Shown here one piece after another: positions 1 to 8,702 of a DNA stretch of 8,702 nt. The notes beneath the pieces are model-generated. The model was given only the letters and a program-made list of their open reading frames with translations, was not told the DNA's origin and searched no databases. Position 1 is the stretch's first letter, and every line of letters begins with the position of its first letter. Origin of the DNA: Octopus sinensis (lineage: Eukaryota); assembly GCF_006345805.1 (NCBI RefSeq), contig NW_021828343.1, positions 1 through 8,702 on the forward strand. Reading direction: 5' to 3'. Both the position numbers and the translations under genes were made by a program.

Positions 1-11
1 ACCCTAAAACA

Positions 12-236
12 TAAAAATAAATAATAAAACCACTATCTATGTCCGAGTTTGATCTTATAATATAATTGTAATAAGTTGATATGAGACATTATTTTTACAA
101 TCCTAACGAGAGGTTTTTATCGTCAGAAATACCTTCCATTTGATTCTATTGTTTAATTTATCAATTAGCTTTCCTGTTGTTATACAATTATTACAACGAC
201 CCTCACAAGCTCAATCGGCTCTTCAAGCGTGTCTTA
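12..236. repeat. Copy 1 of a ~220-bp tandem duplication; retains the empty Ginger target site
   Basis: Aligns by eye to 662-676 joined to 2530-2747, with few substitutions, small indels and a ~14-bp insertion in copy 2. It carries a single TAATA at 22-26, equivalent to the TSD in copy 2. The offset between copies is 650 bp once the Ginger element is removed. Confidence 0.9.
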
Positions 237-241
237 GGCTG

Positions 242-523
242 TTACATGCAATATGGAGACGCCTTTTCAAAGACAATGTCAGCATAACATGTGGCGTTAT
301 TCATGCAGAACATTACTAGTGGGGTATCCCCAAAGAGATCACAGGGGACTGTCTTTCCCCCTGTCTTCTTTATTATTCGGTCGATTAAGGTCGAGTTGTA
401 GTTTTTTAGGCTGATTGAGTATTGTTCTGTCTTGGTATGAAAGGAGGCGTCTATGTAGTCCTTCTCGATGTGGCTCTGCCAGTCGGGAGAGTCGATTGGG
501 TCTTTTGTGGTGAGTAACAGCAC
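242..523 (-). CDS. Orphan ORF of 93 aa (possible host exon or gene fragment), function unknown
   Basis: ORF track; visibly more GC-rich than its flanks. The frame stays open a little upstream of the GTG start (FSKSFLLPAVLLLTT, a hydrophobic stretch), but there is no in-frame ATG and no motif I recognise. Confidence 0.25.
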   Translation of the reverse strand: MLLLTTKDPIDSPDWQSHIEKDYIDASFHTKTEQYSISLKNYNSTLIDRIIKKTGGKTVPCDLFGDTPLVMFCMNNATCYADIVFEKASPYCM

Positions 524-676
524 AGCAGGCAGTAAAAACGACTTGGAAAATTAATGATGATTTTGTAAAAATAAGTTTAGCAAAAACACTAAATTTTTTT
601 TATCAGTTTGGGGTTTTATTTTTATAATTATCGAATAAATGCCATTTCAAAAAACAACTCTTAAAAATAGATAATA

Positions 677-732
677 TGTGACATGGGCGGCTGGATACGT
701 ATGGGCAACCGGTTACCTGACGTGACCTTGAA
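677..732 (+). repeat. Left terminal inverted repeat of Ginger element A
   Basis: TGTGACATGG...GATACGTATGGGC...TACCTGACGTGACCTTGAA; 45/56 identical, ungapped, to the reverse complement of 2469-2524. Confidence 0.92.
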
Positions 733-792
733 GCTTAACTTAATGTCAATATTGTAATTAATATTAAACTTCAAAGAATAATAACTTGTTAA

Positions 793-2254
793 TTATTTTT
801 TAAGTCTGGACATTGGCACAATCGAAATTTTGCTCATCGAATTTTTTATCTATTAAATTTAAATGTTTAAACTACCTCAACGCGATTGTTCGATAAAATA
901 CTGATAATTTCTGCAGATGGATAATATGGAGATTCAAACTTATCCAGTCGCAACGAAGGATTTGTTTCAAAGTCTTTTTTAACTCGAACCTAAACATTAA
1001 TTTTTATGCATACCTTATCACCAACACTAAATTCATACTTACTATTGTGAACATTCATTTTTCTGTTCATCGCTTTGTAATAATTAGAATTAGGATCAAT
1101 GGGGTTGATTTCGAACTGAAATCTTTTCGGACTTGTAAACGAATAATTACAGTCATCTACATATAGAAATTCAAATTACATGAATTTTCAATTGGACTCG
1201 GACAATTGTTTGCATCATCGACTTGGTCAGGACTCAACAAATCATTACTTGAATTATCTAAGGAATAATTTTATAATTACAACCATAAAATATTGTATTT
1301 ATTCCACTTATTCCCCGGTATCTTTCAAAAGGGCTCTCATTAGAAGATGAGTGGACAGAAATGTTATAACTGTACACTGCATTTTCTAATTTTTCCAACC
1401 ACTTTTATTATCATTGTCGATCATTTTTGCCATTTTTCTTGTAATTGACTGGTTGAAGCGTTCGACAATCCCTTGTGAGCGGGGATTGTTTGGCCTTCCG
1501 TGAATTCGTTTGATATTGAATTCCTCACATAGATTGGTCATTTCACGATTCTTGAATTCAGTCCCATTATCGGACTGAAGAAATTGACACGGACCATTTA
1601 AGAAAAATAATGATCTAAGGTTTTCACAAACTTCATTTGAGGACTTAGTGTAGAGCAGCCTCGCAAATGCAAATCTATAAAAATTGTTAAAAAAATAACC
1701 TGCTATATACGTCAATGACCGTTAAAATCCATTTAAAATTTTTATTTATAGTAGAAAAACTTTTCAGATCTATAAGATCTATCTGAAATCTTTCATTTGG
1801 GCAAGATGCAAAGACATAGTTATTTATATCTCCAATCTAGGATTTAAAAAAGTTAAAACTTTTAAGGGTCGCGCAAATTTACAAATTTCACAGTTTCGAA
1901 TGACTTTTCGAATAATCTCGTTTTTAACTGTGAATATCGTTGTCGACATTCATATTCAATTTTGTTAACTCCTCCATGCGAGAAGTCATGCAAACTATTA
2001 GCAACGATCTCCATTTCGGGTTCATTGTCTAGGCAAATCACTAGCTTGTGATCTGAATTCGCACATTTAAGATACAATCTATACATTTACAATTTGTATG
2101 ATACCTTTCATTAATTACAGTAAAATTTTCAATTTTCTTCTAACTAGTCTATATTTTTTTGCTTTGTAAGATGTTCAGGAAATTTATCCTGTAAAGCATC
2201 TTTTAAAATTTGATATTCCAAACTATTCTTTACATAACCTTTCTACGAGGACAT
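793..2254 (-). CDS. Ginger-type integrase/transposase (HHCC Zn finger, DDE core, C-terminal SH3/GPY-F-like module); 8 exons; apparent -1 frameshifts
   Basis: Reconstructed motifs: GYVKNSLEY..., LHDFSHGG...RNCEIC (HHCC), ERFQIDLID (D 1777-1779), VIDVYSR|FAFAR, LQSDNGTEF (D 1569-1571), SQGIVERFNQ (E 1461-1463), YSYNISVHSSSNESPFE, EFSVGDK|VRVKKDF, ...RLKK* (TAA 793-795). Needs 7 introns removed and 4 single-A restorations (T runs at 2154-2160, 2133-2136, 1921-1925, 1390-1394). The N-terminus is uncertain: ATG 2254 is followed by an in-frame TAG at 2243-2245. Confidence 0.85.
840..865 (-). other. Spliceosomal intron 7 (26 nt) of Ginger A integrase
   Basis: GTAGTTTAAACATTTAAATTTAATAG; removal gives NNRVE|IKNSMSK...RLKK*. 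Confidence 0.75.
990..1013 (-). other. Spliceosomal intron 6 (24 nt) of Ginger A integrase
   Basis: GTATGCATAAAAATTAATGTTTAG; ends in an in-frame TAG; removal restores FSVGDK|VRVKKDF. Confidence 0.85.
1157..1179 (-). other. Spliceosomal intron 5 (23 nt) of Ginger A integrase
   Basis: GTAATTTGAATTTCTATATGTAG; unspliced reading hits TAG, and removal rejoins an open frame. Confidence 0.7.
1258..1283 (-). other. Spliceosomal intron 4 (26 nt; alternative donor at 1280 gives 23 nt) of Ginger A integrase
   Basis: GTTGTAATTATAAAATTATTCCTTAG; unspliced reading hits TAG; both candidate donors restore the frame. Confidence 0.7.
1675..1699 (-). other. Spliceosomal intron 3 (25 nt) of Ginger A integrase
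   Basis: GTTATTTTTTTAACAATTTTTATAG; removal restores the integrase-core motif ILTVIDVYSR|FAFAR and joins two different frames. Confidence 0.9.
1837..1859 (-). other. Spliceosomal intron 2 (23 nt) of Ginger A integrase
   Basis: GTTTTAACTTTTTTAAATCCTAG; removal joins CEICKFARPLK in frame to IGDINNYVFASCPNERFQIDLID. Confidence 0.85.
2079..2104 (-). other. Spliceosomal intron 1 (26 nt) of Ginger A integrase
   Basis: GTATCATACAAATTGTAAATGTATAG; removal gives FTVINER|LYLK. A 26-nt intron sits at the same place in element B (5327-5352). Confidence 0.75.
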
Positions 2255-2468
2255 TGCTGCAAAATATACTTGCACGCTAGAAATAACTCAAGAAATTTAG
2301 GTTTTCCACCAAAAAAAATTATTTCTGATAATTAAATTCCTAAAAATATAATTTTTTGTCAAAATGAGAGAGTCTTTAGCTAATTTAGTAAATTATTAAA
2401 TGATAAGAATGAGTCGCGGTCTAATTAAAAGATTTATAATTTAATCCCATCAATGTCATAATTGCACA

Positions 2469-2524
2469 TTCAAGGTCACGTCAGGTATCGCGCGGCCCAT
2501 AGGTATCGCGCAAACCATGTCACA
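2469..2524 (-). repeat. Right (gene-upstream) terminal inverted repeat of Ginger element A
   Basis: Reverse complement matches 677-732; contains AGGTATCGCG twice (2483-2492, 2501-2510). Confidence 0.92.
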
Positions 2525-2529
2525 TAATA

Positions 2530-2747
2530 GAACCACATCTATGTCCGATTTGATTATAATATAATTGTATAAGTTGATGAATTAAATGCTTTATGAGACA
2601 TTGTTTTTATAATCCTAACGAGGTTTTCATCGTCAGAAATACCTTCCATTTAATTCTATTGTTTAATTTATCAATTAGCTTTCCTGTTGTTATACAATTA
2701 ATTACAACGACCCCCACAAGCTCAATCGGCTCTTCAAGCGTGTCTTA
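2530..2747. repeat. Copy 2 (main part) of the tandem duplication
   Basis: Near-identical to 27-236; its first bases lie at 662-676, on the other side of the Ginger insertion. Confidence 0.9.
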
Positions 2748-3269
2748 ATAGCTGCTATTATGGGAAACAGTTTCTCAATTCTCTCTGCGGGTTGTCCCGA
2801 TTTCCTTTTGTTTTTTTGTTTATATTCGAATTCTAGATTAGAAAAAATATTACATATGGTATCGATATGGAACCAACGGAGTTTGAGTTTGTTTATCAAA
2901 ATGTACGTGGAAGCCTGGTGCATCTGAACCAGGAAGAAAAGTTATATTTATCATATTTAACAAAATATCAATAAGAAGAAGATTGCTGTCAGTGTCAAGA
3001 GTGAACAAATACTTTTCTAATTGTGAAAAGACTTGGAAAAGAAGTTGTTTATTATCTAATAAGAGTGGGTATTCTACTGATTGTTAAGTAATAGAATATC
3101 TTAACCGCATTCAAAAATCTTGGAAATTTATTGATGAGTATGTTAAAATAAGTTATCAAAACATATAATCGAAAAGATTGAAAAAAGTCCTTCCATTCAA
3201 TACTTTTTAATTGTCAAACGTGGACAGTAGTAGTTTTGGTCCTAACTTGAAATAGTATTATAAGCAATT

Positions 3270-3337
3270 TTGGTACTTTTGTCGAAGTTTTTAATTATCT
3301 TCTAAAAAAACTGCGACCACTTCGACAAAAGTACCAA
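3270..3337. repeat. Perfect 19-bp inverted repeat with 30-bp spacer
   Basis: TTGGTACTTTTGTCGAAGT (3270-3288) and ACTTCGACAAAAGTACCAA (3319-3337). Confidence 0.9.
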
Positions 3338-3352
3338 TTTTTCTTTGTTGCT

Positions 3353-5155
3353 ATGTCTAATATGAAAAGAAAGGTTGACCGCGAATGCCGTGTATTCAAT
3401 AAATTATGGGAATTGAAGTATTTTTTTGCGAAAGATGAATTAAAGCAGAAAGCTTATTGTTTAATATGCCACGAACATCTCTCTGTTATGAAGGAGTATA
3501 ACATTCGACGTCATTATGAAACGAATCATGCTCCGATATATTCCAAGTACACTGGAAAGCTACGTGAGGATAAAGTTGAATCACTGAAACGCACTTTACA
3601 AATTCAACAAGGCCTTATAAAAAAAATTTTGAAAATAATGAAAATGTAACAAGAGCTGGATACGAGATAACGAAAATTATTTCACAACACGGGAAACCTT
3701 TAGTGATGGGATGTATATCAAAAATTGCATTATTGAAGCAGTTAATTGTGTGTGCCCACTAAATTCTTCCTTATTTGATGGAATAAGTTTGTCGGCGAGT
3801 TCTGTATCACGAGAACTGAAGAGCTTGGAAAAAATATATATTTACAAATTTGTGAAAAGACAAGTAATATGTTGTGGTATTCTCTTGCATTGGATGAGTC
3901 AGTTGACATTTCGGGAACATCGCAACTTCTTATTTTTATTCGTGGAGTTGATGAGAATATTTCCATAACTGAAGAACTGGCATCTGTTTGTTCTATTCAT
4001 GGAACAACCACTGGAAAAGATATTTTTGATGAATTGGAACAAACTATAAGTGACTATAACCTTGAATTGGAGAAACTGAGTTGTGTTACGATTGACGGGG
4101 CAAAGAATATGGCTGGTTTAAAAAGGGTCTAGTTGGGCAAATAACTAATAAATTGGAGGAATTACATATTTCAAACACTTTGTTCATTCATTGCATCCTT
4201 CATCAGCACGCACTATGTGCGAAGGCTCTTAATATTTCATGTGTGTTGAATCCAGTTATTCGCATAATAAACTTTGTTCGAGGGAGCTCACTTAATCACC
4301 GTCAGTTTAAAGTTTTACTTGACGATTTTGGATCTGAATATTTTGACTTACCATATTACACTGCAGTTAGATGGCTTAGCTGTGGTAATGTATTAAATAG
4401 ATTTTATAAACTCCGAAGTGAGATTGATATTTTTCTAACCAGTAAAAATAACTATTATCCCGAATTATCAGATCTTGCTTGGCTATCAAAATTATCATTT
4501 TTGGTTGATGTTACAACTCACATGAATGAGCTAAATCTGAAATTACAAGGAAAGGAAAACTTAATTTGTGATTTCTACAGGATAATTAAAGCATTTCGAC
4601 AAAAATTGATGTTATTCGAGTCACAACTTGGAGTACGTCAGTTTTCACACTTTTCTTGTTTTAAAAGTTTTTGTGAGGCAAACTGAATGAGGATCGACAT
4701 TACTTTCCAAATTGGAATTATCAAAGAATTAAAACATCATTTTTTACATAATTTTCTGAACTTGACAAAATTGAAAGCGATATAATTTTGTTCGGAAATC
4801 CATTTTCTTGTAATGTTGAGAATGTTCAACATGAATTACAGTAAGAAGTTGTTGACTTACAATCAAAAGAACACCTCAAAGATTGTCACAGACGGACCAA
4901 ACTCCCTGAGTTCTACGAATATATCAAGGATGATGAGTTTCCGAGACTAAAGAATTTTGCGATGATGATTTCTATATTTGGCACAACTTACCAATGTGAG
5001 CAAACGTTTTCGAGGATGAAATATTTAAGTCTGCCCATCGTGCAAGATTGACTGACGGACACTTAAAATCAATTCTCATGATAGGATGCAGCAATTTAAA
5101 ACCAAATATTGATGAACTTATCAAAAAAAGATCACAGTTCCATAGCTCTCATTAA
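3353..5155 (+). pseudogene. Buster/SPIN-type hAT transposase (GTF2IRD2/ZBED-like), frameshifted
   Basis: BED-type Zn finger CLIC...RRHYETNH; LALDES (D 3893-3895); TIDGA (D 4094-4096); HCILH (4189-4203); VRWLS (W 4372-4374); TYQCEQTFS (E 4998-5000); ends QFHSSH* (TAA 5153-5155). At least six -1 frameshifts and two in-frame stops (TGA 4684-4686, TAA 4842-4844). No introns needed. Confidence 0.92.
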
Positions 5156-5313
5156 AATTTTTGTTTACTTTATTTTTGTTTAAATTAGTTTTTATTGTAA
5201 AAAACACACTTATGAATTCTAGTAAAATTATAATCCTATGCACGTGCTCCGGCCCGCGTTCATTGTGTTGGGGTCAATCCGGCCCGCGAGTGCAAAAAGT
5301 TTGGTGACCCCTG
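3353..5313 (+). mobile_element. hAT superfamily, Buster/SPIN-like element; right end intact, left end absent
   Basis: Transposase 3353-5155; right TIR whose reverse complement is CAGGGGTCACCAAACT (5298-5313); subterminal TCCGGCCCGCG twice (5248-5258, 5278-5288); adjacent 8 bp CTTTAGAT fit the Buster NNNTANNN target pattern. No left TIR or matching left TSD found; the start coordinate is the ATG, not the true end. Confidence 0.88.
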
Positions 5314-5524
5314 CTTTAGATAGAGACTACGAATTAGGAATATCAAATATACCGATTATCATAAATTGATTCGCTTTTTTAATAAGTTTGTGTTTTTCGG
5401 ATTTAGATGTAGTTTATAAGGGTATTTGGAGTAGTGCATTTAAAATATTTTTATATTCACTGTCATTTTCACGTAACCTAAGAATTGAGACTATATTAAT
5501 ACAACATCTTTTGGAAGATACCAT
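5314..5524 (-). pseudogene. N-terminal remnant of Ginger B integrase with two short introns
   Basis: ATG(5524)|31-nt GT-AG intron 5491-5521|SQFLGYVK(N)DSEYKNILNAL...KSEKHKLIKKANQFMI|26-nt GT-AG intron 5327-5352|LYLK, versus element A GYVKNSLEYQILKDAL...KQKKYRLVRRKIENFTVINER|LYLK. Needs single-base restorations and has an unresolved stop or indel near 5405-5420. Confidence 0.7.
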
Positions 5525-5609
5525 TTTTTAATAAAATTACGCTAAACCCTTTTTATAATAAATTTTTTTTTTTTATTTTTTTTTTTTATATGTAATTAAC
5601 AAATAGTTA

Positions 5610-5784
5610 TTAACTAACTAAATTCCCGGCATCGTAAATGGAAACACAGTTTCCACGTACTATGGCCAAGGAAATCCTTTCGAAAAGCCACTTGGACTCG
5701 CGTGGGTCTCCCCGTTTATGGGAGATCATGCGGCCAAGCTTTTTTAGAAAGGAAAGAGACTTTTCGCCGATGACGCCGGAAGTC
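5610..5784 (-). pseudogene. C-terminus of the CRE RLE domain (non-inverted 3' segment)
   Basis: Translates TSGVIGEKSLSFLKKLGRMISHKRGDPRESKWLFERISLAIVRGNCVSIYDAGNLVS*, directly continuing the plus-strand body; followed by a 22-nt 3' UTR and poly(A). Confidence 0.9.
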
Positions 5785-7587
5785 AGCTAATCTCACTGCT
5801 TGGGCAAAAAAGATAACGGGGTCAGGCCGATCGCCGTGGGTAATGTTTTCCGCAGATTGGCCGGAAAGCTCGTTTGCCACGTTGTGATCCCCGAGTTGGT
5901 CCCGAAATTTTTGCCAGTCCAATTGGGCGTCGGCGTCAGTGGAGGGTGTGAATCGGCTGCCCATGCCGTAAGAGAACTTATGGATTCTTCATTGGAATAT
6001 CTTTTAGTTAAACTGGACATATCAAATGCGTTTAACACAGTGAGACGGGATCATTTGCTCGAGACCTGCCTTTCTCTCGCCCCCTCCGCTTATCCTCTAG
6101 TCCACCTTTCGTACTCACAACCCAGCCCCTCCTGTTTGGCGATTCCTTTATCGTCTCATCGACCGGAGTGCAACAGGGAGATCCCCTGGGGCCTTTCCTA
6201 TTTGCTATGTGTGTCAACTCCGTCGCTCATTCTGTCCGCTCTCCGGTAAATATCTGGTACTTGGACGACGCGACGATTGTGGACCTCCCCGCTCTGTCTT
6301 AGACGACCTGCGGAGCATTATCCCGGCCCTTTCATCCATCGGTCTGGAGATAAACTCAAGCAAGTCCGAAGTCCTAAACCTGAATATTCCTTCCGATTTT
6401 TTTGCCGAAACTCTGGACGCCCTGGAACCTATTCTAAAAGGCGCGCGGGTATCAGAAACAAAGGACCTTGTAATCCTTGGTTCGCCAATTGGTCACGAGG
6501 CCCTCTCACAAACGCTCATCGCCAAGGCAAGCAATCTGTCAAACATGATCGAACGGCTTTCCCTCATTGATGCCACGTCGGGTTCTTTCTTCTGCGTAAC
6601 TATTCTCAACTCCGAGGCTTTTGTACACCCTAAGGAGTTCTCCTTGTTTTCGCATGCCTAATCTGTTATCCGATATCGATTCTATCTTGAAGTCTGGAGC
6701 CGAGTATCTGTGCAACATCCATTTCGACGCTCTGGGGTGGCTTCAATCTTCCCTGCCTGTTAATCTCGGGGGATTGGCCTTCGTTCGCCGTTTATCTGGC
6801 TCTTCCTGCCTTCCTCTCGTCCCTGGCATCATCCCGTGCCCTCACTGACATCGTTCTCAGAAACCTTCCCGAACGAAAAATGTCAGTTGATCACGTGGCC
6901 GCTCTGGACCTTTGGATTCATTGTACAACAAAAGACCCAGTGACCCGTGTATCCAAGCTCAATGGGATGCCATTTCTTGTGAAGCTCTTGACGTACATCT
7001 ACGCAAAATTTCGATCAGCACAGACTTGCATGTCTCCGCGCAGGCTGCTGCACAGGGAGTGGGGCCTGGCTGGATGCTCTCCCTGTCCCTTCCACCGGTA
7101 ACCTACTAGACAAAGATTGCCTACGAATTGGTTTATCATTGCGTCTTGGATTGGAAATCTGCGAAATACACAAATGTCGTTGTGGTGCTGTCATTGACCG
7201 TTTTGGTCTACATCCCCTTTCCTGTCGTCGCAGTGCAGGGCGCGCACCACGCCATGCAGCACTTAACGACGTTATTCAGAGGGGGCTCACGGCCGCTGGG
7301 ATCCCATCAATCCTCGAACCCGTCGGGCTTGCGAGGGGAGACGGAAAAAGACCCGACGGCCTATCGACTTTCCCGTTGAGTTCGGCAAGTCTCTGTTATG
7401 GGATGCGACGTGTTCAGACACTTTCTCGGAGCTCAACCTTCCTTCTTCAGCTGTCGAGCCTGGCTCAGTCTCTCGCAAAACCGAGAAGATGAAGATTGGA
7501 AAGTACAAGGAGCTCTCTGAACGGTATCTGTTCACTCCCATCGCCGTCGAGACTTCCGGCGTCATCGGCGAAAAGTCTCTTTCCTTT
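5785..7587 (+). pseudogene. CRE-type reverse transcriptase, CCHC finger and RLE (inverted segment)
   Basis: KKDNGVRPIAVG; QLGVGVSGGCE; KLDISNAFN; GVQQGDPLGP (from 6165); WYLDD (YLDD 6258-6269); GGLGLRSA; SGAWLDALP; CRCG...HPLSC (7175-7225); RHAALND; KRPDG (RPDG 7349-7360); LLWDAT; K..KY; PIAVETSG. Ten -1 frameshifts and no nonsense codons after correction. Confidence 0.93.
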
Positions 7588-7647
7588 ATAATAAATTATT
7601 TTCGTTTTTAATTGAATGTCAAACTATGTAGGTCACGCTGTCAACAA

Positions 7648-7885: not shown

Positions 7886-7992
7886 CAGGGTTGTTAAAAA
7901 TCATGATTTTTTTCAAAAAAATCAAAAAAATCTGATTTTTTTGATTTAATCACGATTTTTTTGATTTAAATCAGATTTTTTTGAATTAAATG
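7886..7992. mobile_element. Terminus of a second hAT-like DNA transposon with subterminal repeats (internal extent unknown)
   Basis: Starts CAGGGTTG; palindrome GATTTTTTTCAAAAAAATC (7905-7923); three GATTTTTTTGATTTAAATC-like units at an exact 20-bp period (7934, 7954, 7974); preceding 8 bp GTTGTAAC fit the Ac-family nTnnnnAn target pattern. The other end is not in the window. Confidence 0.55.
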
Positions 7993-8498
7993 ATCTTTAT
8001 TTCAAAACGACCCTTTCCACCTGGCTTATCAGAGAACCTCTCTCTTTGTACATAAACACTGAAAAACGGCCACGCAGAACGATCTATCGTAGTTCCTTAT
8101 GTCCACCGGGATCACTTAACTAGTTTGCATACGCTTTCTTTCTTGTGGTCTTCGGGTTAATAAATGTGACCGGTTCATAATGAGATACGGTTGAATACGA
8201 GTCGTTAAAAAGATCGATAATTAATATACCGATTCAAAAGGCCAATTACAATAAACGCAAACGTTCCGAACTAATGATTGAACTTTAAATTTTTGAAAAA
8301 ATGATGTTTTATATTTGAACCATGTTTGCTTTAAAATACTAAAATTATTTACAACATTAGCAAATTATAATGTGAATTATTTTATTTGATACTATAAATT
8401 GAACATTAGCAAAATTACAAGTTTGTAACACTTTAACTTAATCTAACTTAACTCTAACTTTTTTTTGGTTGAGGTGGTGACGTGCCTCTCTTGCACTA

Positions 8499-8702
8499 AT
8501 GTCTATTAAGCATTCGAAACAATCTAATGAACTAACAATCCTTACCTTCAATGTCAGAAGTCTGAAAACCGTGGCTAAGAGGCACCTTCTATGTACTGAT
8601 CTCGAAAAATACCAGGGCTCTATATGCTGTCTACAGGAGACTAAAGTAAAACACGGACTTGACGAAATACACGGAAATTATCGCCTAATACTGCTTCCCT
8701 CA
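8499..8702 (+). mobile_element. Start of an APE-endonuclease ORF of an RTE-like LINE (runs off the window)
   Basis: Open frame from ATG 8499 to the window end: MSIKHSKQSNELTILTFNVRSLKTVAKRHLLCTDLEKYQGSICCLQETKVKHGLDEIHGNYRLILLPS, with APE motifs TFNVRSL and CLQETK. Not in the ORF track, presumably because it has no stop in the window. Confidence 0.85.

What the first reader, a model, noticed from the sequence alone, without database searches (positions are those of the whole stretch)
793..2254. DNA transposon integrase gene split by seven 23-26-nt spliceosomal introns
Seen in sequence: seven GT...TAG segments of 26, 23, 25, 26, 23, 24 and 26 nt (in gene order); removing them joins ORF fragments into one HHCC-DDE-C-terminal integrase and repairs motifs exactly (DVYSR|FAFAR, VGDK|VRV). 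Established: Ginger elements are Gypsy-integrase-related DNA transposons and some carry introns; introns this short are typical of few lineages (e.g. dicyemids, microsporidia, some ciliates). Inference: this transposon lineage has adopted its host's miniaturised intron format at high density, so its transposase depends on host splicing and would be missed or fragmented by standard annotation.
Basis: partly seen in the sequence, partly recalled or inferred. Interest (0 to 1): 0.88.

Follow-up and report, generated by a model that had tools for sequence, protein, structure and literature searches.

The report
Mini-intron Ginger-like transposon, dicyemid-type genome
A small cut-and-paste transposon (window 677-2524) carries an integrase-like transposase gene interrupted by seven real 23-26-base introns, the intron format of the tiny-intron animal genome it sits in (most likely a dicyemid parasite of octopus); this particular copy is also broken by a stop codon and four frameshifts.

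Summary

They behave as introns:
- Intronless homologues from Dictyocoela microsporidia align without gaps across five junctions.
- An unbiased deletion scan recovers the lengths 26, 23, 25 and 24 nt.
- Diverged copies keep the same positions with changed sequence and 22-27 nt lengths.
- dN/dS is 0.23 when the introns are removed.

Removing them does not give one ORF. This copy still has a TAG at codon 4 and four frameshifts, three of which are absent from other copies.

The gene lies in a 1,848-bp element with about 56-bp terminal inverted repeats, TGTGA termini and a 5-bp TAATA duplication. A paralogous empty site lies in the same window. That matches Ginger2/Tdd-type structure; phylogeny was not tested.

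The host was inferred indirectly. Near-identical neighbouring transposons occur in contigs deposited as Octopus sinensis. Those contigs carry CLU and WD40 genes, and a 7tm_1 receptor gene, whose Pfam matches become continuous once 19-29 nt GT..AG segments are removed. They also lack octopus repeats. The best candidate is a dicyemid, probably Dicyema.

This is a new member of a known kind, of moderate interest. No RNA evidence was available.

The parts
22..26 (.). Paralogous empty target site (single TAATA) in an uninterrupted copy of the flanking repeat
   Evidence: The joined flanks of the element align straight through this point with window 1-110. The repeat copies are 30-236 and 2540-2747.
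672..676 (.). Target-site duplication TAATA, left copy
   Evidence: Read from the sequence. It is identical to 2525-2529 and single in the paralogous site.
677..732 (+). Terminal inverted repeat at the 3' end of the gene; starts TGTGACATGG
   Evidence: the repeat finder I1: arms 672-732 and 2469-2529, 80% complementary. Aligned with the ends of other copies.
793..849 (-). Exon 8, with stop codon TAA at 795-793
   Evidence: Translation ...IKNSMSKISIVPMSRLKK* ends where the Dictyocoela homologues end.
850..875 (-). Intron 7, 26 nt, phase 0, GTAG...ATAG
   Evidence: Same position in L009 copies A and B (27 nt) and in the second family in L005 (25 nt). An alternative donor 3 nt downstream (872) cannot be excluded.
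876..989 (-). Exon 7 (VRVKKDFETNPSLRLDKFESPYYPSAEIISILSNNRVE)
   Evidence: Strongly conserved in L009 copy B.
990..1013 (-). Intron 6, 24 nt, phase 0; retention would read an in-frame TAG
   Evidence: The deletion scan gives 24 nt as the optimum. Position is conserved in three other copies, at 27, 27 and 25 nt.
1014..1156 (-). Exon 6
1157..1179 (-). Intron 5, 23 nt, phase 1
   Evidence: It lies in a variable linker, so distant homologues do not constrain it. It is conserved in position in L009 copy B at 27 nt.
1180..1257 (-). Exon 5 (variable linker)
   Evidence: Copy B has a 6-nt in-frame insertion here.
1258..1283 (-). Intron 4, 26 nt, phase 1 (alternative 23-nt donor at 1280)
   Evidence: The acceptor is conserved in L009 copy B. 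The second family has a 24-nt intron three codons downstream. This is the least constrained of the seven.
1284..1674 (-). Exon 4: catalytic core with the second D and the E (SDNGTEF ... GIVERFNQ); frameshift near 1400
   Evidence: Pfam rve 2.2e-15. Invariant D208 and E244. The frame change between ...DNDNK and KWLEKLENAVYSYN is seen.
1675..1699 (-). Intron 3, 25 nt, phase 2, inside the catalytic core (DVYSR|FAFAR)
   Evidence: The deletion scan optimum is 25 nt, raising the score from 96 to 251. The alignment is gap-free.
1700..1836 (-). Exon 3: first catalytic D (FQIDLIDL)
1837..1859 (-). Intron 2, 23 nt, phase 0, just after the CxxC of the zinc finger
   Evidence: The deletion scan optimum is 23 nt. 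It is identical in the 97% copy in L005 and is 22 nt at the same position in L009 copy A.
1860..2078 (-). Exon 2: HHCC zinc-binding region; 1-nt deletion after 1935
   Evidence: Pfam Integrase_H2C2 2e-6. The L005 and L009 copies read through as RQRYFTVKNEII / RQSYFTVKNDII.
2079..2104 (-). Intron 1, 26 nt, phase 2
   Evidence: The deletion scan optimum is 26 nt. Same position in L009 copy A at 27 nt, GT..CAG, with diverged sequence between conserved exon edges.
2105..2254 (-). Exon 1 from ATG 2254-2252; nonsense TAG 2245-2243; 1-nt deletion after 2160; 2-nt insertion near 2140
   Evidence: The N-terminus KGYVKNSLEY aligns with KNFVKNKTEY of P0001. L009 copy A reads KKYRLADKIQNFTIINE in one frame.
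2469..2524 (-). Terminal inverted repeat at the 5' end of the gene
   Evidence: It is 95% identical to an element end in L005.
2525..2529 (.). Target-site duplication TAATA, right copy

Best explanation
Window 677-2524 is one copy of a small (1,848 bp) cut-and-paste DNA transposon of Ginger2/Tdd-like structure.

**What it encodes.** Its single gene, on the minus strand, encodes an integrase-like transposase. The protein has an HHCC zinc-binding region, a DD35E catalytic core and an SH3-like C-terminus.

**The introns.** The gene is split by seven spliceosomal introns of 23-26 nt, so the transposase can only be made from mRNA spliced by a spliceosome that handles such introns. Every intron either shifts the frame or carries an in-frame stop if retained. 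The introns have the size and density normal for the genome in which the element lives. That genome is a tiny-intron animal genome, most probably a dicyemid (Dicyema) from Octopus sinensis.

**How it moves (inferred).** The transposase would bind the roughly 56-bp terminal inverted repeats, cut at the TGT...ACA ends and insert at TAATA/TATTA pentamers, giving a 5-bp duplication.

**State of this copy.** As assembled it is dead: one nonsense codon and four frameshifts. It could move only if an intact copy supplied transposase.

**Shown:** the anatomy; the discrete insertion; homology-defined intron boundaries; positional conservation of introns among diverged copies; purifying selection on the spliced frame; mini-introns in host genes on linked contigs.

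**Inferred:** actual splicing; transposase activity; the name of the host.
For: **Protein identity**
- Pfam rve 2.2e-15 and Integrase_H2C2 2e-6 on the stitched protein.
- The closest proteins are 450-458 aa continuous ORFs of Dictyocoela roeselum and D. muelleri: 46% identity, full length, E 1e-102.

**Intron evidence**
- Junctions 1, 2, 3, 6 and 7 are gap-free against these homologues.
- The deletion scan recovers 26, 23, 25 and 24 nt.
- Introns are 19% GC against 33% for exons.
- L005 holds a 97% copy with an identical intron 2 and no frameshift.
- L009 copies A and B are 73-80% identical. They keep introns 1, 2, 5, 6 and 7 at the same positions, with lengths of 22-27 nt.
- A second family in L005, 33% amino-acid identity, has five 24-25 nt GT..TTAG segments. 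Two are at exactly the positions of introns 6 and 7.
- dN/dS against L009 copy B is 0.23 over 127 codons (dS 0.78) with introns removed.

**Transposon anatomy**
- Terminal repeats, TSD and empty site.
- The D. muelleri relative is also a TIR element: 213-bp TIRs, TGTCG termini, TATTA duplication.
- These features match the Ginger2/Tdd definition in PMC2836005.

**Host evidence**
- The window's hAT and non-LTR units are 97-99% identical to units in contigs deposited as O. sinensis.
- Those contigs carry a CLU homologue whose CLU_N and CLU Pfam matches become continuous after removing 28-, 22- and 22-nt GT..AG segments.
- They carry a 7tm_1 gene with a 19-nt intron.
- They carry a WD40 repeat that is completed by removing a 29-nt segment.
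- They share none of the repeats common to O. vulgaris and O. bimaculoides chromosome loci.
- Dicyema japonicum was collected from O. sinensis (PMC6736024).
- Dicyema introns are 26.2 +/- 1.9 nt (PMC2222250).
Against: - No transcript evidence was available, so splicing is inferred.
- The window copy is not intact.
- Introns 4 and 5 lie in a non-conserved linker. Introns 4 and 7 each have an alternative in-frame donor 3 nt away.
- Introns are about as conserved as exons between copies (71-92% against 77%), so sequence conservation alone does not separate them.
- Host identity rests on shared transposons and on annotated 'Octopus sinensis' contigs that I read as parasite DNA. No dicyemid reference sequence could be searched.
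- Ginger2 membership by phylogeny is untested. The nearest named outgroups include both Gypsy-type Pol proteins and Polinton integrases.
Confidence: 0.85

Rival explanations
1. The window is genuine octopus DNA. The element, carrying dicyemid-style introns, reached the octopus germ line by horizontal transfer from its renal parasite, and it cannot be expressed there.
For: The neighbouring hAT and non-LTR units match proteins annotated as Octopus sinensis at 97-100% identity. The matching contigs are large, at 215-669 kb.
Against: - Two of these contigs, L007 and L004, carry ordinary host genes (CLU, WD40, 7tm_1) with 19-29 nt introns. That is not an octopus gene structure.
- About 95 kb of window plus linked contigs contains none of the SINE-like repeats that cover 10-14% of bona fide O. 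vulgaris and O. bimaculoides loci.
- The dinucleotide signature also differs.
- Several diverged copies, two families, and nested hAT and LINE insertions argue for long residence in one genome.
Confidence: 0.06
2. The segments are not introns. They are short insertions or assembly errors in a decayed integrase pseudogene, such as a fragment of an LTR retrotransposon pol gene.
For: The copy does contain real lesions (a stop codon and four frameshifts). GT..TAG strings of this size are common in AT-rich DNA.
Against: - All seven have GT..TAG ends and fall in a 4-nt size range.
- Four have lengths fixed independently by homology.
- The same positions are occupied in copies 20-67% diverged, with different sequence but the same ends and size class.
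- dN/dS of 0.23 holds only for the spliced frame.
- Indels between the window and copy B are +4, +3 and +1 nt in the introns, against two 6-nt in-frame indels and one 1-nt indel in the exons; copy A's exons carry -10 and -8 nt deletions.
- TIRs, a TSD and an empty site, with no RT, argue against an LTR element.
Confidence: 0.03
3. The host is a different tiny-intron organism: a myxobolid myxozoan, a microsporidian or a ciliate.
For: - Myxobolids have 22-27 nt median introns and about 29% GC (PMC13644364).
- The closest transposase relatives are microsporidian.
Against: - The link is to an Octopus sinensis assembly, and Dicyema japonicum is that octopus's renal parasite.
- The microsporidian relatives are intronless.
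- The gene ends at a TAA exactly where the homologues end, which does not fit a ciliate code that reads TAA as glutamine.
- A rhodopsin-type 7tm_1 receptor on a linked contig points to an animal.
Confidence: 0.06

Closest known systems
[quoted passage not shown] 2010, PMC2836005)
   Same: - Cut-and-paste element with one integrase-like transposase (H2C2 zinc finger plus DDE core).
- Terminal inverted repeats of tens to hundreds of bp.
- Termini of the TGTNR type.
- Short AT-rich target duplication, 5 bp as in TDD-4/5.
- No YPYY motif and no conserved GPY/F motif.
   Different: - At 1.85 kb it is smaller than any family in their Table 2 (2.7-6.7 kb).
- It has seven introns of 23-26 nt. That paper reports 0-4 introns for Ginger1 and lists none for Ginger2.
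- The flanking pentamer is TAATA/TATTA at 4 of the 5 independent insertions examined (L009 copy B differs), plus a degenerate AGTTA at a solo TIR.
- Phylogenetic grouping with Ginger2 is untested.
Intronless relatives in the microsporidia Dictyocoela muelleri and D. roeselum (annotated 'Gag-Pol polyprotein')
   Same: - 46% identical over the full length.
- Same domain order.
- The D. muelleri copy is a 1.8-kb element with TGT...ACA ends and a TATTA 5-bp duplication.
   Different: - Continuous ORFs with no introns.
- Much longer TIRs (213 bp).
- A different host kingdom.
Ginger1 elements and the host genes GIN1/GIN2 derived from them
   Same: Gypsy-integrase-related transposase. Some families carry GT-AG introns.
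   Different: Ginger1 has a 4-bp CCGG/CCGT target, YPYY and GPY/F motifs and C-terminal OTU or Ulp1 domains. None of these is present here.
Miniature spliceosomal introns of dicyemids (Aruga 2007; Ogino 2010; Lu 2019; Zverkov 2019) and myxobolids (Hadjez 2026)
   Same: - GT..AG introns. These seven average 24.7 +/- 1.4 nt, against 26.2 +/- 1.9 nt in Dicyema genes.
- About one intron per 160-200 bp of coding sequence.
- Reduced splice-site motifs (GTa ... AG).
   Different: - These introns are in a mobile element, not a host gene.
- All twelve transposon introns seen in the two families end in TAG, and they are AT-richer than those in the CLU gene.
Polinton/Maverick integrases
   Same: The more distant hits with rve plus chromodomain include a Nematostella integrase lying next to a protein-primed DNA polymerase B. 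This fits the reported Ginger2-Polinton affinity.
   Different: There is no polymerase, capsid or ATPase gene here. The element is 1.85 kb, has a 5-bp rather than a 6-bp duplication, has TG..CA rather than AG..TC ends, and has no chromodomain hit.

Membership tests
Ginger2/Tdd DNA transposons | Transposase with an H2C2 zinc finger and a DDE (DD35E) integrase core | tested here: met
   Pfam Integrase_H2C2 and zf-H2C2, and rve. Invariant H83, H87, C117, C120, D147, D208 and E244 in alignment A1.
Ginger2/Tdd DNA transposons | Terminal inverted repeats of about 50-300 bp flanking a single-gene element, with no RT or RNase H | tested here: met
   Arms 677-732 and 2469-2524. There is one gene between them. 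The D. muelleri relative has 213-bp TIRs.
Ginger2/Tdd DNA transposons | Termini follow TGTNR ... CA | tested here: met
   TGTGA in the window, L005 and L009 copy A; TGTCG in D. muelleri; TGTCA in L009 copy B.
Ginger2/Tdd DNA transposons | Target-site duplication of 4 bp (animal families) or 5 bp (TDD-4/5), with AT-rich targets | tested here: met
   5-bp TAATA on both sides and single in the paralogous empty site. TATTA in D. muelleri. TAATA/TATTA flanks also occur in L005 and L009 copy A; the L004 solo TIR flank is AGTTA and the L009 copy B flank is ATGTG.
Ginger2/Tdd DNA transposons | Lacks the YPYY and GPY/F motifs of Ginger1 and Gypsy integrases | tested here: inconclusive
   No YPYY is seen upstream of the zinc finger. 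The C-terminus reads KFESPYY in the window, but KFESKYK and KFEEIYG in relatives. A GPY/F-like position is therefore not conserved. This was judged by eye only.
Ginger2/Tdd DNA transposons | Transposase groups with TDD-4/5 and Ginger2 in a phylogeny, apart from Ginger1 and Gypsy | not testable with these tools
   No Repbase Ginger or TDD sequences were available. The named distant hits are a Gypsy-type Pol fragment (P0005) and Polinton integrases.
Ginger1 DNA transposons | 4-bp CCGG/CCGT target duplication and a C-terminal OTU or Ulp1 domain | tested here: not met
   The target is TAATA (5 bp). Pfam finds no domain beyond the zinc finger and rve.
GingerRoot | 6-bp GC-rich target duplication and 100-150 bp TIRs | tested here: not met
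   The duplication is 5 bp and AT-only, and the TIRs are about 56 bp.
Spliceosomal (U2-type GT-AG) introns of the miniature class | GT...AG boundaries at sites where intronless homologues are continuous | tested here: met
   (five of the seven junctions).
Spliceosomal (U2-type GT-AG) introns of the miniature class | Position conserved while sequence and length drift among diverged copies, with selection on the spliced frame | tested here: met
   dN/dS 0.23.
Spliceosomal (U2-type GT-AG) introns of the miniature class | Absent from mature mRNA | not testable with these tools
   No transcript data for the source organism could be searched.
Spliceosomal (U2-type GT-AG) introns of the miniature class | Same size class as introns of host genes in the same genome | tested here: met
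   Introns of 19-29 nt in CLU, 7tm_1 and WD40 genes on contigs linked to the window by 97-99% identical transposons. The link to the window's genome is indirect.

The most novel reading that the evidence does not exclude
The seven or eight introns were gained after an intronless Ginger2-like element entered the dicyemid lineage. Its nearest relatives, in Dictyocoela microsporidia and in one metagenome contig, have none. The second dicyemid-type family has an extra intron inside the RPNxPxSQG|V/I-ERFNQ core motif.

If so, the transposon family would record recent intron gain in a genome whose introns are otherwise thought to be ancient, conserved and merely shrunken. The family would also have moved between unrelated parasite lineages.
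Probability: 0.3. Interest if true: 0.7.

Novelty: new member of a known kind. Interest (0 to 1): 0.45.

Why it matters
- **A mobile element fully fitted to an extreme host gene architecture.** Its transposase needs seven splicing events of 23-26 nt introns. Standard gene finders and TE annotators, which usually assume introns of at least 30-40 nt, will see only fragments.
- **A handle on how miniature introns arise and are kept.** Diverged copies and two families share intron positions, while the microsporidian relatives have no introns. These are introns in a non-host gene of datable copies.
- **A practical warning about a public assembly.** Several large contigs, and RefSeq proteins labelled Octopus sinensis, look like DNA of its dicyemid parasite. 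This matters to anyone using that assembly or scoring horizontal transfer between cephalopods and other animals.

Tried and rejected
- **An eighth intron at 2246-2223 (24 nt, GT..TAG).** It would remove the early TAG. I rejected it because homologues have residues there: KGYVKNSLEY aligns with KNFVKNKTEY.
- **Mini-introns to repair the two mid-gene frameshifts.** I considered a 20-nt GT..CAG segment near 1948-1929 and a 17-nt GT..TAG segment near 1403-1387. Two other copies read straight through the first site. The second would delete the conserved W...L..A..YN motif.
- **A minimal-intron path search from ATG 2254 using GT..AG of 20-30 nt.** It stalls at 2144. That is how the extra lesions were found.
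- **Gapped tblastn of homologues against the window.** It blurred the junctions, so I replaced it with the deletion scan.
- **Exact look-up of a window ORF in the assembly collection.** Nothing was on record.
- **Dinucleotide signature.** It separates the window group from two octopus chromosome loci, but it is noisy at 8-10 kb. I treat it as suggestive only.
- **The O. sinensis genome paper.** It is not in the library, so tissue source and contamination screening are unknown.
- **Nematostella hits as bona fide Ginger2 references.** The one I checked lies next to a DNA polymerase B and is therefore a Polinton integrase.
- **Metagenome scan with the family alignment.** It returned only distant integrase relatives, at most 42% identity in the core, and I did not pursue it.
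- **Intron against exon conservation as a discriminator.** There was no clear difference.
Full report
**1. The observation**

The gene lies on the minus strand. The seven GT...TAG segments are at window 2104-2079, 1859-1837, 1699-1675, 1283-1258, 1179-1157, 1013-990 and 875-850.

Removing them does join DVYSR|FAFAR and VGDK|VRV. The result, however, is three reading-frame blocks, not one ORF. The lesions that remain in this copy are:
- an in-frame TAG at codon 4 (2245-2243);
- a 1-nt deletion after 2160;
- a 2-nt insertion near 2140;
- a 1-nt deletion after 1935;
- a frameshift near 1400.

Two other copies read straight through the first three frameshift sites. Those are therefore private mutations or assembly errors, not features of the family.

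**2. Is it more than chance?**

GT..TAG strings of 23-26 nt are not rare in this AT-rich gene: 12 observed against 6.4 +/- 2.7 in shuffles. The signal is where they fall.

The stitched protein hits Pfam rve (2.2e-15) and Integrase_H2C2 (2e-6). Its best homologues are continuous 450-458 aa ORFs of the microsporidia Dictyocoela roeselum and D. muelleri, at 46% identity over the full length and E 1e-102. A JGI metagenome ORF reaches 57% identity.

In the alignment, junctions 1, 2, 3, 6 and 7 are gap-free. I then scored every possible deletion (0-60 nt, any position, no splice-site rule) against the homologues. The best lengths were exactly 26, 23, 25 and 24 nt for introns 1, 2, 3 and 6, and the GT..TAG window was within one score unit of the best placements. 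Only 0.2% of windows of that size are GT..TAG, so four such coincidences are not chance. Introns 4 and 5 lie in a variable linker and are not constrained by the distant homologues.

**3. Other copies**

Searching the neighbouring hAT transposase led to contigs deposited as Octopus sinensis (GCA_006345805.1). They hold further copies of this element.
- L005 has a 97% identical fragment with an identical intron 2 and an intact frame.
- L009 has two copies at 73-80% identity.

In these diverged copies the introns sit at the same positions. Their sequences have drifted and their lengths are 27 nt (intron 1), 22 nt (intron 2), 27 nt (intron 5), 27 nt (intron 6, both copies) and 27 nt (intron 7, both copies). 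All keep GT..AG.

A second, much more distant family in L005 (33% amino-acid identity) has five 24-25 nt GT..TTAG segments. Two are at exactly the positions of introns 6 and 7. One is at a new position inside the conserved core motif NHPQSQ|GVIERFNQ.

Read with the introns removed, the window copy and L009 copy B differ with dN/dS = 0.23 (dS 0.78, 127 codons). Selection therefore acted on the spliced frame while the family diverged. This is the strongest indirect evidence that the segments are removed from the mRNA.

**4. What the unit is**

Inverted repeats at 672-732 and 2469-2529 resolve to an element at 677-2524. It has TGTGACATGG... termini and TAATA on both sides. The joined flanks align straight through the junction with an uninterrupted paralogous copy of the flanking repeat at window 1-110, which has a single TAATA at 22-26.

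The flank is TAATA/TATTA at element ends in L005 and L009 copy A, degenerate (AGTTA) at a solo TIR in L004, and ATGTG in L009 copy B. The D. muelleri relative is itself a 1.8-kb element with 213-bp TIRs, TGTCG termini and a TATTA duplication.

These are the structural hallmarks of Ginger2/Tdd as defined by Bao et al. 2010: TIRs, TGTNR termini, 4-5 bp AT-rich duplications, and an H2C2 plus DDE transposase. They do not fit Ginger1 (CCGG target, OTU/Ulp1 domains) or GingerRoot (6-bp GC-rich duplication).

Phylogenetic membership could not be tested. The Nematostella hits with rve plus chromodomain turned out to be Polinton integrases. That is compatible with the reported Ginger2-Polinton affinity but is not a test of it.

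**5. Which host?**

The window contains only mobile-element debris, so the host had to be inferred.

*The link to Octopus sinensis contigs*
- The hAT unit (3336-5320) is 96.6-99.3% identical to units in three contigs labelled O. sinensis.
- The GC-rich non-LTR unit (5563-7594) is 99% identical to one in a fourth contig.

*Why those contigs do not look like octopus DNA*
- L007 carries a CLU/CLUH homologue spread over overlapping ORFs in different frames.
  - Removing 28-nt and 22-nt GT..AG segments gives a continuous CLU_N match.
  - Removing a 22-nt segment turns two partial CLU matches (105 and 46 bits) into one of 158 bits covering profile positions 29-225.
  - The same contig has a 7tm_1 receptor that is continuous after removing a 19-nt GT..TAG segment.
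- L004 carries a WD40 gene in which removing a 29-nt segment completes a WD40 repeat: 16 bits becomes 37 bits.
- Bona fide chromosome loci of O. vulgaris and O. bimaculoides share many SINE-like repeats with each other (6.3 kb of 31 kb). They share none with the roughly 95 kb of window plus linked contigs, apart from a distant hAT relative.
- The dinucleotide signature points the same way, weakly.

*Why a dicyemid*

Dicyema japonicum was collected from O. sinensis. Its genome is 36.7% GC, 49% repeats, and has 6.2 introns per gene. Dicyema introns measure 26.2 +/- 1.9 nt by genomic/cDNA comparison, with a median of 27 nt. Among animals, only dicyemids and myxobolid myxozoans are known to have such introns.

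My reading is that the window and these contigs are dicyemid DNA, and that the O. sinensis assembly contains parasite contigs. The alternative, that the element was transferred into octopus, is disfavoured by the host genes with mini-introns on the same contigs.

**6. How it most likely works**

A cut-and-paste transposon whose transposase mRNA needs seven splicing events. Retaining any one intron shifts the frame, or, for the 24-nt intron, reads an in-frame TAG.

The intron phases are 2, 0, 2, 1, 1, 0, 0. Four of the seven follow an AG|R exon context, read directly from the sequence.

The transposase presumably recognises the conserved sub-terminal ACCTGACGTGACCTTGAA block in both TIRs and inserts at TAATA/TATTA with a 5-bp stagger. 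Activity is inferred from homology, not shown. The window copy is non-autonomous as assembled.

**7. Comparison and novelty**

All three ingredients are known: transposase genes with host-style introns, Ginger2-like elements, and dicyemid mini-introns. What is new is this family:
- the smallest Ginger-like autonomous architecture described (1.85 kb);
- seven or eight introns, against the 0-4 reported for Ginger elements;
- a strong TAATA/TATTA target preference;
- intronless relatives in microsporidia.

I found no paper on dicyemid transposons with introns. I class it as a new member of a known kind, of moderate interest. A more interesting open question is whether the introns were gained inside the transposon.

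**8. Limits**

There are no RNA data. No dicyemid reference could be searched. There is no Ginger reference set for phylogeny. The boundaries of introns 4 and 5 rest on frame, splice sites and one diverged copy.

Noticed in passing
L007 (VCDQ01011375.1) 14398-15385 and 16877-20715; L004 (VCDQ01002078.1) 2540-3617; also L005 and L009, all from GCA_006345805.1: Contigs deposited as Octopus sinensis carry CLU, 7tm_1 and WD40 genes with 19-29 nt introns, and they lack the repeats shared by other octopus genomes. They look like DNA of a dicyemid parasite in the host assembly. If so, RefSeq proteins such as the 'GTF2IRD2-like' and LOC1152xxxxx reverse-transcriptase entries may be mislabelled as octopus.
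   Followed up: partly
window 3336-5320 (+): A roughly 2-kb hAT element encoding a GTF2IRD2/FAM200-like transposase, with several 1-nt frameshifts and no mini-introns. Copies in L004, L005 and L007 are 96.6-99.3% identical. In L005 a copy abuts, and apparently interrupts, a copy of the Ginger-like element. Relatives in O. vulgaris and O. bimaculoides are only about 62-67% identical.
   Followed up: partly
window 5563-7594 (+): A GC-rich (about 50%) fragment of a non-LTR retrotransposon: RT plus a C-terminal CCHC/REL-endonuclease-like region, with frameshifts. It is bounded by a 45-nt inverted repeat (5740-5784 / 7551-7595) and is 99% identical to L009 15673-17671. The related intact element in L005 is nearest to barnacle proteins named SLACS and to many unnamed marine metagenome proteins. 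No O. bimaculoides or O. vulgaris protein was among the top 120 hits.
   Followed up: partly
window 30-600 and 2540-3160: Two copies of a roughly 600-bp repeat. The blocks 30-236 = 2540-2747 and 542-577 = 3119-3154 are 86-98% identical, with an unrelated middle part (237-541 against 2748-3118). The Ginger-like element is inserted at the start of the second copy. The middle part of copy 1 holds a 93-aa ORF (242-523, minus strand) of unknown nature.
   Followed up: no
L005 7140-7830 (+): A 5'-truncated copy of a second, distant Ginger-like family (33% amino-acid identity). It has five 24-25 nt GT..TTAG introns, one of them at a new position inside the catalytic-core motif. One residual frameshift lies after the third intron.
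   Followed up: partly
window 7896-8001: A short array of about 20-bp units (AAATCWGATTTTTTTGATTTAA, three copies) with overlapping inverted repeats. It lies just downstream of the non-LTR fragment.
   Followed up: no
window 8165-8459 and 8535-8702: 8165-8459 is 94% identical to L009 2758-3058, an unclassified repeat. By eye, the last 170 bases read on the plus strand like the N-terminus of an AP-endonuclease domain of another LINE (LTFNVRSLKT...CLQETKV). This was not tested with a tool.
   Followed up: no
L002 3784-5597 (Dictyocoela muelleri SDVU01000034.1): The protein annotated 'Gag-Pol polyprotein' is the transposase of a 1.8-kb DNA transposon with 213-bp TIRs and a TATTA duplication. It is not part of a retrotransposon.
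   Followed up: yes
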